Virus record (IMG/VR): IMGVR_UViG_3300013005_000001
Coordinates: 124,001 to 188,000 of that record
Length of the DNA stretch: 64,000 nt
Reading direction: 5' to 3' (one strand)
In this document: positions 834 to 1,799 of the stretch, one piece after another
Position numbering within the stretch: position 1 is the stretch's first letter
Layout of the letters: every line of letters starts with the position of its first letter
The notes under the pieces: model-generated
What the model saw: only the letters and a program-made list of their open reading frames with translations
The model's database searches: none
Told to the model about the DNA's origin: nothing
Translations under genes and position numbers: made by a program

Positions 834-913
834 GATGATACCCCCTTTCTCCATGGTTTCACCCATGGGTAAAGGCGCACACCGGGTTGGTGCACGACTT
901 GGCAACCTTGCGG

Positions 914-959
914 CTACCCATAAAAGAAAAACCCAGGAACTGACCCTGGGTTATCTTTA
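914..959 (-). repeat. Cassette junction 3 (identical to junction 1)
   Basis: Exact 46-nt match to 212-257. Confidence 0.9.
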
Positions 960-970
960 CGAGTTTTACA

Positions 971-1291
971 TCAAGCATCGTAGAAAAGCTTAATAAAGCC
1001 TTCTTCGATATCCTTTGTAGGAAGAACTTTAATTGAATAAAGATCATCTGCAAAGAGACTGATGTATCCACCTTCTTGGGCAACGGCCTGCAAATCATGC
1101 ACCCCCATAGGGACACAGACATACATGTCGTTTGGCAACGATACCAATGGATGCTTCTGGTTGTCCAGATAGCACCCGTCTAGCACTCGGCTGTGCGCCT
1201 GTGTGCATGACATGTGTACCTCCATAAGGGTGTCGCCCTCAAAGAAGAACACGTGGTACGTATTCCTAGAGTAAATGGTTACCTCTTCCAT
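971..1291 (-). CDS. Hypothetical protein, 106 aa
   Basis: AAAGGAG SD; bounded by junctions. Confidence 0.8.
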   Translation of the reverse strand: MEEVTIYSRNTYHVFFFEGDTLMEVHMSCTQAHSRVLDGCYLDNQKHPLVSLPNDMYVCVPMGVHDLQAVAQEGGYISLFADDLYSIKVLPTKDIEEGFIKLFYDA

Positions 1292-1360
1292 AATTGCTCC
1301 TTTCAGTTAGCAAGTAGGGGTTGCGTACACCGGTTGGTGCACGACTAAGTAGCTGTTGGA

Positions 1361-1407
1361 CTACCTATAAAAGAAAAACGGACGCATACGAGACGCCCGC
1401 TTTCCTT
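1361..1407 (-). repeat. Cassette junction 4: hairpin + TTTTTCTTTTATAGGTAG
   Basis: Conserved core; imperfect GC-rich stem. Confidence 0.85.
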
Positions 1408-1502
1408 ACCTGTGATCATTCGGCTTCTTTTTTCTCACTTACTAGATCTTCTGTTGCCAGGCCAAAGATATGGCCCCGAATCAAATTCAATTAGCGATCA
1501 AC

Positions 1503-1688
1503 TCAGATGTGCTTCTTGATGGTCCTTGCTCCGAAGAACGAGGCAACCACAAGAACGCCCAACCAGTTAACCAAGCCAAGAACGATTGCAACAACCGTCC
1601 AAGCCCAGCTCACTGCAGGAGTCACCAAGAGAACAACCACAAGGATTGCAAACCTGTGCTCCCGGAGGAACGCTTTGATTTTGTTCAT
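1503..1688 (-). CDS. Small membrane protein, 61 aa, about 2 TM segments
   Basis: AAAGGAGGTG SD before ATG 1688; long hydrophobic stretches. Confidence 0.8.
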   Translation of the reverse strand: MNKIKAFLREHRFAILVVVLLVTPAVSWAWTVVAIVLGLVNWLGVLVVASFFGARTIKKHI

Positions 1689-1754
1689 TTCACCTCCTTT
1701 CACAAAGATGAACGAGCGCATGCCGGAGTGGCACACGACTTAGCAACCTCTCGG

Positions 1755-1799
1755 CTACTCATAAAAGAAAAACACCACACTGGCTGTGTGGTGCCTCTT
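1755..1799 (-). repeat. Cassette junction 5: hairpin + TTTTTCTTTTATGAGTAG
   Basis: Stem CACCACAC/GTGTGGTG plus conserved core. Confidence 0.9.

What the first reader, a model, noticed from the sequence alone, without database searches (positions are those of the whole stretch)
876..1759. Conserved two-hairpin leader RNA with covariation (3 copies)
Minus-strand copies at 876-918, 1324-1366 and 1717-1759. Hairpin 1 starts inside the junction core: GGUAGCC-GCAA-GGUUGCC versus AGUAGCC-GAGA-GGUUGCU (GNRA loops, compensatory change). An AGU linker follows, then hairpin 2: CGUGCACC/GGUGUGCG, CGUGCACC/GGUGUACG, CGUGUGCC/GGCAUGCG (two compensatory pairs). The G-U pairs fix the strand. Candidate novel cis-regulatory or 5'-stabilising RNA motif.
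Basis: seen in the sequence. Interest (0 to 1): 0.7.

Follow-up and report, generated by a model that had tools for sequence, protein, structure and literature searches.

The report
Portable two-hairpin leader of phage mRNAs
A real, covariation-supported two-hairpin RNA sits at the start of several small-gene messages in an uncultured 210-kb lake phage and its relatives, matches no described RNA family, and most likely stabilises or regulates those messages, although no function has been tested.

Summary
The three minus-strand copies fold as described. The phage (210,302 bp, terminal repeats) has 7 full copies. Related lake phages add more, giving 44 distinct sequences.

Covariation is strong. 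97-98% of cells are paired, against 30-51% when partners are slid. 8-9 of 15 pairs show compensatory changes, and no shuffle in 500 reached that. RNAalifold finds the same fold unaided. About a fifth of the pairs are G-U, which fixes the minus strand. Rfam has no match.

Context: an 11-kb cluster of about 22 small genes of unknown function. Most genes are preceded by a terminator hairpin, an invariant core (Y10-AT-RRR-TAG), a structured leader and a strong ribosome-binding site. Hairpin 1 pairs the core's GGUAG. Rare G-to-A changes there are compensated, so the core is transcribed. The leader is portable: the same leader precedes unrelated genes, and the same gene carries different leaders.

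Best reading: a 5'-end protective hairpin plus a conserved bulged hairpin, in terminator-initiator cassettes comparable to T4 PeSLs. Whether the core is a promoter or a processing site is unresolved. The phage has no T7-like polymerase and the junctions have no sigma-70 consensus, though a weak sigma-like gene exists.

The parts
876..918 (-). Two-hairpin leader, copy 1. HP1 is at 901-918, the linker at 897-900 and HP2 at 876-896.
   Evidence: Fold. Covariance-model hit at 71.8 bits.
1323..1367 (-). Two-hairpin leader, copy 2. HP1 is at 1346-1367. HP2 is at 1324-1343, plus the outer pair G1345-C1323.
   Evidence: Fold. Covariance-model hit at 58.9 bits.
1716..1759 (-). Two-hairpin leader, copy 3. 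HP1 is at 1742-1759. HP2 is at 1717-1737, plus the outer pair G1739-C1716.
   Evidence: Fold. Covariance-model hit at 63.5 bits.
914..931 (-). Junction core TTTTTCTTTTATGGGTAG of copy 1. Its last five bases, GGTAG, form the 5' arm of HP1.
1361..1378 (-). Junction core of copy 2, the variant ...TATAGGTAG.
1755..1772 (-). Junction core of copy 3, the variant ...TATGAGTAG. The G-to-A change is compensated in the 3' arm of HP1.
930..952 (-). G+C-rich hairpin followed by the T-tract. This is the intrinsic-terminator-like element of the upstream gene and it abuts the core.
   Evidence: 120 of 126 junctions have such an abutting hairpin.
1379..1399 (-). Terminator-like hairpin upstream of the copy 2 core.
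   Evidence: Read from the sequence. General pattern.
1768..1798 (-). Terminator-like hairpin upstream of the copy 3 core.
543..833 (-). 96-aa ORF of unknown function served by copy 1. A further hairpin at 844-875 pairs CCUUU with the AAAGG of the ribosome-binding site.
971..1291 (-). 106-aa ORF of unknown function served by copy 2.
1503..1688 (-). 61-aa predicted membrane ORF served by copy 3. A hairpin at 1689-1712 sequesters the ribosome-binding site.
212..229 (-). Junction core with a different structured leader.
449..466 (-). Junction core with the leader class that has the 'UAUGRAAG loop'.
1998..2015 (-). Junction core with the same 'UAUGRAAG loop' leader class. Compared with the copy at 449-466, a stem C-G pair has become U-A.
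2640..3008 (.). Divergent non-coding region at the head of the small-gene cluster. It is nearly identical in a related phage (L040:5200-5470), where it ends in the first core.

Best explanation
The element is a portable, cis-acting structured 5' leader of phage messages. It lies in an 11-kb cluster of about 22 small genes that is probably early or host-takeover.

Nearly every gene in the cluster sits in a cassette with five parts:
- a G+C-rich hairpin plus T-tract, which is an intrinsic and largely bidirectional terminator;
- an invariant core, Y10-A-T / R-R-R / T-A-G;
- a structured leader;
- a strong AAAGGAGG ribosome-binding site;
- a small ORF.

In 7 of the 22 cassettes the leader is the two-hairpin module.

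Shown here:
- Both hairpins form in RNA of the minus strand and are kept by compensatory change.
- HP1 uses the core's GGUAG as its 5' arm.
- The module moves between unrelated genes.

Inferred:
- The downstream message begins at or just upstream of the purine triplet. My preferred route is initiation at RRR from a single-element, phage-specific promoter in the core. The second route is cleavage in the U-tract of read-through RNA.
- Either way, HP1 sits at the extreme 5' end. There it would block 5'-end-dependent decay by the RppH/RNase E or RNase J type pathways.
- HP2 has an invariant closing C-G pair, a tandem U-G/G-U, a bulged pyrimidine, and flanking invariant AG and C. It is most likely a recognition site for a protein, or a second barrier, that sets the stability or translation of this subset of messages.
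For: Structure:
- 98.3% of cells are paired, against 31-51% when partners are slid. 8 of 15 pairs are compensatory. No shuffle in 500 reached the observed value on any of the five measures.
- With 44 distinct sequences the result is the same, 96.9% paired and 9 of 15 compensatory.
- RNAalifold finds the same fold on an alignment that was not fitted to structure.
- The single-sequence folds agree.

Strand: roughly 67 of 298 cells are G-U.

The core is transcribed and paired:
- Rare A substitutions in RRR are matched by C-to-U on the partner.
- Positions +2 and +3 are paired with probability 0.88-0.90 over 81 junctions, against 0.66 for shuffled controls.

Cassette architecture.

Portability:
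- One 87-nt leader precedes four unrelated ORFs.
- The MGPNGG... and MFIPKE... genes carry different HP2 variants in different phages.

Sequence-level constraint beyond pairing:
- TTTAT, TAG, the linker AG, C85, U87, U105 and C109 are invariant or nearly so.
- RRR never flips to pyrimidine, as expected of initiating or cleavage-adjacent nucleotides.

Six cores lack the terminator hairpin yet keep the pyrimidine tract, so the tract is part of the signal.
Against: - No 5' end has been mapped. Lake metatranscriptome data are read-length contigs at depth 2-3.
- One such contig covers the leader plus 10 nt of the T-tract (window 779-929). If it is RNA, that molecule did not start at RRR.
- The junctions have no sigma-70 -35/-10.
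- No fixed-distance upstream element is possible, because the hairpin span varies from 12 to 39 nt.
- The genome has no T7-like polymerase, with T7 itself as a positive control. It has no RpoB-like domain and no DxDGD two-barrel motif.
- The only candidate specificity factor is a weak, possibly split sigma-like gene about 80 kb away.
- No partner for HP2 is known.
- The host is unknown, so the relevant RNases are unknown.
Confidence: 0.55

Rival explanations
1. Processing module of a read-through polycistronic early RNA. Host polymerase starts at sigma-70-like promoters in the conserved divergent region (about window 2740-3008). It reads through the junction hairpins, perhaps in an antiterminated state. 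An endonuclease then cuts in or next to UUUAU/GGG. The U at -1, the G at +1 and the 7-bp helix resemble an RNase P substrate. An RNase III cut in the A-tract/U-tract extension of the hairpin is another option. Each message is left with a 3' hairpin and a 5' HP1, as with the RNase III sites of T7 early RNA.
For: - No recognisable promoter lies at the junctions.
- No phage polymerase was found.
- In a relative, the first core lies about 140 nt downstream of a conserved TTGAAG-N16-TATAAA (read by eye).
- An RNA-library contig includes 10 nt of the T-tract upstream of RRR.
- The invariant letters flank one phosphodiester bond.
Against: - Twenty or more canonical terminators in series, each a G+C stem directly followed by U5CU4, would have to be overridden.
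- No antiterminator has been identified.
- The U-tract does not fit the RNase E consensus (RN/WUU, from my own knowledge).
- The contig evidence is one read-length record from a related strain and could be DNA.
Confidence: 0.27
2. An RNA that modifies the polymerase (put-like) or recruits a factor (nut-like) and so acts as an antiterminator. The nascent two-hairpin RNA would make the transcribing polymerase resistant to the downstream terminators.
For: - Two adjacent hairpins sit in nascent RNA immediately ahead of a run of terminators.
- The invariant unpaired or bulged nucleotides suggest a binding surface.
Against: - There are 7 copies in about 5 kb, each followed after one gene by another terminator and core. 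One copy per transcription unit would be enough.
- 15 other cassettes use unrelated leaders.
- The HP1 loop is free to vary and accepts insertions of up to 55 nt, unlike boxB.
- The 43-nt size is well below that of put, about 65-70 nt (from my own knowledge).
Confidence: 0.08
3. A short upstream ORF. The core contains ATG, and copies 1 and 3 read as 20-residue peptides (MGSRKVAKSC.., MSSREVAKSC..).
For: The ORF list shows these frames. 36 of 44 leaders have AUG at the core.
Against: - AUG is AUA in 5 of the 44 and GUG in 2.
- Copy 2 stops after 7 codons.
- Loop lengths differ by 1-2 nt and by large insertions, so the frame is not kept.
- No ribosome-binding site precedes the AUG.
- Substitutions are compensatory for pairing, not synonymous.
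Confidence: 0.03
4. Repeat DNA with no RNA function: recent duplication or gene conversion of a cassette, or a plus-strand element. The complement of the leader and core reads TTGGCA-N16-TAAAAG, which resembles a sigma-70 promoter.
For: - Recombination between leaders does occur. One example is chimeric: L034:1234-1291 has the hairpins of one own-genome copy and the downstream part of another.
- The plus-strand hexamers were read by eye.
Against: - The pattern is many independent compensatory changes with conserved pairing, not identity.
- About 22% of pairs are G-U and would be A-C mismatches on the plus strand.
- A plus-strand start would run straight into the bidirectional terminator.
Confidence: 0.04

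Closest known systems
PeSL / PmSL cassettes of T4-like phages (PMC2839356, PMC4122927)
   Same: Both are short, conserved composite terminator-plus-initiation signals repeated between small genes of unknown function in a plastic region. Both are associated with modular swapping of genes and signals.
   Different: PeSLs carry a recognisable sigma-70 (or MotA) -35/-10, and the motif here does not. PeSLs are not described with a covarying structured leader that overlaps the signal. The phage lineage also differs: the terminase here is nearest to Moorella and Bacillus jumbo phages at 28-37% identity.
5'-terminal stabiliser stem-loops (E. coli ompA leader, T7 gene 10 leader GGGAGACC..GGUUUCCC, B. 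subtilis aprE and phage SP82 leaders; from my own knowledge)
   Same: In both, a hairpin begins within 1-2 nt of a purine-rich start and lies upstream of a strong ribosome-binding site. The T7 leader likewise folds its +1 GGG into the stem.
   Different: The 5' end is not mapped here. There is a second conserved, bulged hairpin. The module is shared by many genes and many phages as a defined family.
HK022 put RNA and lambda nut (boxA/boxB) antitermination signals (from my own knowledge)
   Same: All are hairpin RNAs in the nascent leader, upstream of terminators, in phage early transcription. put also has two hairpins with a very short linker.
   Different: The element here is shorter. It occurs in many copies per cluster, it has no conserved loop, and terminators recur after each copy.
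RNase III processing sites of T7 early RNA and RNase P processing of phage P1/P7 C4 RNA (from my own knowledge)
   Same: Both involve structured intercistronic signals that leave hairpin-capped messages or RNAs.
   Different: Neither hairpin offers a helix of about 20 bp. There is no CCA tail. No Rfam C4 match was found.

Membership tests
Any Rfam 15 family | Covariance-model score at or above the family's gathering score | tested here: not met
   There were no matches in the 64-kb window at gathering score. At E<=5 over bases 1-3000, none of the six weak hits covers a leader. The nearest is ohsC at 923-998, with 23.9 bits against the 50 needed.
PeSL promoter-terminator cassette | Terminator stem-loop fused to an initiation signal between small ORFs | tested here: met
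   A hairpin plus T-tract abuts the core in 120 of 126 junctions. There is one cassette per small ORF.
PeSL promoter-terminator cassette | Sigma-70 type -35 / N17 / -10 (or Mot box plus -10) consensus | tested here: not met
   The sigma-70 scan finds nothing at the junctions (6 sites against 6.5 expected, none at a core). The hairpin span of 12-39 nt rules out a fixed upstream element.
PeSL promoter-terminator cassette | Association with shuffling of genes of unknown function | tested here: met
   The same leader precedes unrelated ORFs, and the same ORF carries different leaders. The ORFs have no Pfam or PHROG family.
5'-terminal stabiliser stem-loop | Stem starts within a few nucleotides of the mRNA 5' end | not testable with these tools
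   Only read-length contigs at depth 2-3 are available from RNA libraries. No 5'-end data exist.
5'-terminal stabiliser stem-loop | Stem maintained by selection | tested here: met
   HP1 is 94-96% paired and 4-5 of its 7 pairs are compensatory.
HK022 put-type antiterminator RNA | Two adjacent stem-loops in the nascent leader ahead of terminators | tested here: met
HK022 put-type antiterminator RNA | One element per transcription unit acting over many downstream terminators; size about 65-70 nt | tested here: not met
   There are 7 copies in about 5 kb, each followed by a new terminator and core. The element is 43 nt long. The put dimensions come from my own knowledge.
lambda nut boxB | Short stem with a conserved GNRA-like loop bound by N | tested here: not met
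   HP1 loops include GCAA, GAGA, CCAACA, CUGACG and UUCG, and accept insertions of up to 55 nt. HP2 loops also vary.
   No Rfam hit was found. The only invariant unpaired letters are AG and one C.
Intrinsic terminator / attenuator (for HP2) | U-run directly after the stem | tested here: not met
   HP2 is followed by an invariant C and then mostly A-rich sequence.

The most novel reading that the evidence does not exclude
The cassette would define a previously undescribed expression system in a family of uncultured freshwater jumbo phages. It would have two parts. The first is an 18-28-nt single-element signal (Y10-AT-RRR-TAG...AGRYY), used either by host polymerase redirected by a divergent phage sigma-like factor or by a sequence-specific endonuclease. 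The second is HP2, acting as the operator of a phage-encoded RNA-binding regulator that co-controls a sub-regulon of 7 early genes.
Probability: 0.2. Interest if true: 0.75.

Novelty: new variant of a known kind. Interest (0 to 1): 0.5.

Why it matters
The leader is a well-supported new RNA motif: 44 distinct sequences, compensatory changes in both helices, and no Rfam family. It lies in a lineage of abundant lake jumbo phages that persisted for years and for which nothing is known about gene expression.

The motif overlaps an invariant junction signal that fits no known promoter class. Mapping the 5' ends would therefore show whether these phages use a new promoter type or a new processing signal.

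The portability of the leader also extends the PeSL idea, in which regulatory cassettes act as units of gene shuffling, to a phage group unrelated to T4.

As a compact, insulated terminator/leader/ribosome-binding-site unit, it could also interest people who build expression parts.

Tried and rejected
- **Cultured relatives and bacterial carriers.** Megablast of bases 1-6000 against cultured phages found nothing. An 18-mer core scan of 185,579 prokaryote genomes gave only single, chance-level hits, so no prophage or host clue emerged.
- **Literature.** Searching papers for the core string found only unrelated hits.
- **Polymerase hunt.** PF00940, PF00562 and PF04542 were all negative. PF00940 was re-checked with T7 as a positive control. 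A DxDGD motif scan gave one hit, in a 537-aa reading frame whose context did not look polymerase-like to me. The three giant virion ORFs have no sequence relatives in the PDB. PHROG and Pfam scans of 20 or more large ORFs showed no polymerase.
- **RNA evidence.** Both read-laying runs returned only six or seven read-length contigs, so there is no 5'-end information.
- **Archaeal TATA-type reading** (TTTAT as the box, start near the linker AG). Rejected because HP1 would then not be transcribed, yet it covaries as RNA. The phage also has a bacterial-type RecA.
- **SigB-type -10 reading of GGGTAG.** Rejected for the same reason, and because no GTTT lies at the right spacing.
- **SPO1 gp28-type promoter** (AGGAGA-N17-TTTnTTT, from my own knowledge). 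The T-rich part fits, but the purine tract sits at a variable distance.
- **Repeated 10-mers outside the cluster.** The search gave no clear second promoter motif.

Full report
**Where the window lies.** The window is bases 124,001-188,000 of a 210,302-bp virus record with direct terminal repeats, rated 100% complete. More than 20 lake-water metagenome runs from 2018-2024 hold it almost word for word. It is a myovirus. Terminase, portal, major head protein and tail-sheath genes lie on the plus strand from about 7 kb. The terminase is nearest to Moorella phage MTATph1 (37%) and to Bacillus jumbo phages of the 0305phi8-36 group (28-31%). The finding lies at the left edge of the window, on the minus strand. 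The genes there run away from the structural module.

**The observation.** The linker is four nucleotides, not three. The shared junction core TTTTTCTTTTAT-RRR-TAG occurs 6 times in the window against 0.1 expected.

**The window edge hides most of the system.** In the whole genome the core occurs about 22 times. All copies are on the minus strand between 115,297 and 126,015, and none lies anywhere else. A simple gene call shows one core in front of almost every ORF of that 11-kb stretch. The proteins are 33-170 aa with no family, apart from a HAD/PNKP-type phosphatase, one 618-aa protein with a PcfJ-like domain and one 792-aa protein with no family match. Seven of the cassettes carry the full two-hairpin leader, at 58-77 bits. 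The others carry other structured leaders.

**Relatives.** The 18-mer core finds related contigs in IMG/VR, including complete genomes of 206 kb and 203 kb. A motif pattern finds 23 more metagenome contigs. A covariance model built from 20 hand-collected leaders finds 4, 4, 2 and 2 full copies in four related phages and none in a fifth. Over all the sequence held, it finds 89 hits, of which 44 are distinct. No bacterial or archaeal genome carries the cassette.

**Is the structure real?** Three lines of evidence agree.
- On the MAFFT alignment, which was not fitted to structure, 98.3% of cells form standard pairs against 31-51% when the 3' partners are slid by 1-3 columns. Eight of 15 pairs have changes on both sides, against 3.2 +/- 0.8 in shuffles. 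None of 500 shuffles reaches the observed value on any measure, including the two measures with a low false-positive rate.
- RNAalifold predicts the same two helices on its own. It adds an invariant G-C pair that extends hairpin 2 across a bulged pyrimidine.
- The 44-sequence alignment gives 96.9% paired and 9 of 15 compensatory pairs. That alignment leans towards the model, so I treat it as confirmation only.

Orthologous genes in different phages carry leaders that differ by compensatory changes. For the MNKIKAFLREHR gene, hairpin 2 reads CGUGUGCC/GGCAUGCG, CGUAUGUC/GGCAUGCG or CGUGUACC/GGUAUGCG. About 22% of paired cells are G-U, so the structure belongs to minus-strand RNA.

**Constraints beyond pairing.**
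- In hairpin 1 the 5' arm (G)GUAG is essentially fixed. The 3' arm varies only within what wobble allows. Real covariation sits in the two inner pairs and in the rare cases where a core G becomes A and its partner C becomes U.
- The hairpin 1 loop is free. It can be GCAA, GAGA, CCAACA, CUGACG or UUCG, and it accepts insertions of up to 55 nt.
- In hairpin 2 the closing C-G, a U-G followed by G-U or A-U, the linker AG and the C after the stem are invariant or nearly so.
- Over 127 distinct junctions of all leader classes, the conserved letters are G at -13, a ten-pyrimidine tract, AT, RRR (about 90% G), TAG (97-100%), and a further A-G-R-Y-Y at +12 to +16.
- RRR never becomes pyrimidine.

**What the junction is.** A G+C-rich hairpin abuts the pyrimidine tract in 120 of 126 junctions (median -11.4 kcal/mol), and the tract is its U-run. 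The purine run before the hairpin complements the tract, so several sites also read as terminators on the plus strand. These are canonical intrinsic terminators. Six cores have no hairpin yet keep the tract, as TCTTTTTTTTAT, so the tract belongs to the core signal as well. The core is transcribed, because hairpin 1 covaries with it.

**How the downstream message gets its 5' end is not settled.**
- *A promoter in the core, starting at RRR.* This explains why every gene has its own terminator. It matches the precedent of T4 PeSLs (PMC2839356, PMC4122927) and the T7-like look of TAT/GGG with a 5' hairpin.
  - Against it, the junctions have no sigma-70 consensus, and no fixed upstream element is possible.
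  - The genome also encodes no T7-like polymerase (with T7 as positive control), no RpoB-like domain and no DxDGD motif.
  - One candidate specificity factor exists. It is a pair of overlapping ORFs at genome 41,544-42,450 with weak sigma-factor similarity: TIGR02937 at 2e-6, phrog_351 at 6e-8, and Sigma70_r4_2 below threshold.
- *Processing of read-through RNA.* The 270-bp divergent region at the head of the cluster (about window 2740-3008) is almost identical in a related phage, where it ends in the first core. By eye it contains a TTGAAG-N16-TATAAA.
  - One RNA-library contig from a related strain covers window 779-929. That span is the start of the ORF, hairpin 2, hairpin 1 and 10 nt of the tract upstream of RRR.
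  - This contig is a single read-length record at depth 3 and may be DNA, so it counts for little.
  - This route needs 20 or more strong terminators to be overridden.

I put the promoter route at about 0.45, the processing route at about 0.3, and the remainder on neither.

**What the leader does.** On either route, hairpin 1 begins at the second purine, so the message would start with at most one or a few unpaired nucleotides. This is the geometry of known 5' stabilisers such as the ompA and T7 gene 10 leaders (from my own knowledge). Across all leader classes the core purines are preferentially paired, 0.88-0.90 against 0.66 for shuffled downstream sequence. This points to a general rule, of which the two-hairpin leader is one implementation.

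The fixed bulge, the tandem wobble and the flanking letters of hairpin 2 look like a recognition surface for a protein. Hairpin 2 could alternatively be a second barrier. No partner is known.

Some versions add a third hairpin that pairs CCUUU with the AAAGG of the ribosome-binding site, so translation may be controlled as well.

**Portability.** The 87-nt long version precedes four unrelated ORFs in different phages. The MGPNGGNINGTY and MFIPKEIIITMI genes carry different hairpin 2 variants in different phages. One leader (L034:1234-1291) is a chimera of two leaders from the genome studied here. The leader and core therefore behave as exchangeable regulatory cassettes, as proposed for PeSLs.

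**Readings rejected.**
- *Short upstream ORF.* The AUG is not invariant, the frame is not kept, and no ribosome-binding site precedes it.
- *Self-cleaving ribozyme.* There is no model match and no conserved core.
- *boxB-like or put-like antiterminator.* The loops are free, there are 7 copies, and a terminator follows each copy.
- *Attenuator.* No U-run follows hairpin 2.
- *Plus-strand element.* The G-U content rules it out.

**Verdict.** This is a real, conserved and apparently undescribed structured 5' leader, confined so far to one family of uncultured lake jumbo phages. By kind it belongs with 5'-stabiliser or operator hairpins inside promoter-terminator cassettes. In detail it is new: it overlaps an invariant non-sigma-70 junction signal, it has a second bulged hairpin, and it is portable. 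No function has been tested.

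Noticed in passing
window 212-2015 (6 copies); genome 115,297-126,015 (about 22 copies; L057:7297-18015): The invariant junction core Y10-AT-RRR-TAG follows a terminator hairpin in front of nearly every small ORF of an 11-kb minus-strand cluster. It occurs nowhere else in the 210-kb genome. Conservation continues to +16 (A-G-R-Y-Y) across all leader classes.
   Followed up: yes
window 406-456 and 1954-2005 (minus strand); also L024 and L035: A second leader class has a hairpin with a conserved UAUGRAAG loop and a covarying stem (UCAGG/CCUGA, UUAGG/CCUAA, CUAGG/CCUAG). A conserved loop suggests specific recognition.
   Followed up: partly
L057:11276-11421 and 8325-8469 (genome 119,421 and 116,469, minus strand); also L034, L035, L036, L043: Leaders of about 145 nt share ..GUGGCUUAACAGCUCC..AACGAGUAAAUAGU. 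The one at 119,421 precedes a 148-aa protein (MSETKKTYLYVNTAP..) that has two paralogues of 139-147 aa. This may be another structured RNA.
   Followed up: no
L153:819-1725 (genome 41,544-42,450, plus strand): Two overlapping ORFs (113 aa and 196 aa) show weak sigma-factor similarity: phrog_351 at 6e-8, TIGR02937 at 2e-6, and Sigma70_r4_2 below threshold. They could be a split or frameshifted phage sigma-like factor. A homologue is present in the related 206-kb phage (L152).
   Followed up: partly
window 2640-3008; L040:5200-5470: The 270-bp divergent non-coding region at the head of the cluster is almost identical between two phages whose flanking first genes differ. By eye it contains TTGAAG-N16-TATAAA and a GGGTACGGGGGTATACC element. 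In the window the first gene (2069-2629) has no core, but in the relative the region ends in a core.
   Followed up: partly
window 724-874 and 779-929 (RNA-library contigs): Two read-length contigs from lake and river metatranscriptomes end within 2-3 nt of a hairpin base. One ends just 3' of hairpin 2 and the other just 3' of the terminator hairpin. This may reflect structure-biased fragment ends. The sample is far too small to interpret.
   Followed up: no
window 34097-35305 (+): A 402-aa protein has an Mtd_N domain (major tropism determinant N-terminal domain, 2.7e-17). This hints at a target of a diversity-generating retroelement in the tail-fibre region.
   Followed up: no
window 5189-6175 (-) and 7091-8260 (+): The phage encodes a bacterial-type RecA (328 aa; named from its sequence by eye, not scanned against any family) and a 389-aa protein matching an 'ATP-dependent protease' PHROG with an AAA+ domain.
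   Followed up: no
window 55237-61899 (+); L058:5304-15614; L051:3173-9385: There are three giant ORFs of 2220, 3436 and 2070 aa. None has a sequence relative in the PDB. The 2220-aa ORF has no Pfam family. The 3436-aa ORF matches a PHROG named endolysin strongly, and the 2070-aa ORF matches another endolysin-named PHROG only weakly.
   Followed up: partly
window 876-931, plus strand: The complement of the linker and core reads TTGGCA-N16-TAAAAG, which resembles a sigma-70 promoter pointing into the bidirectional terminator. It is probably incidental.
   Followed up: no
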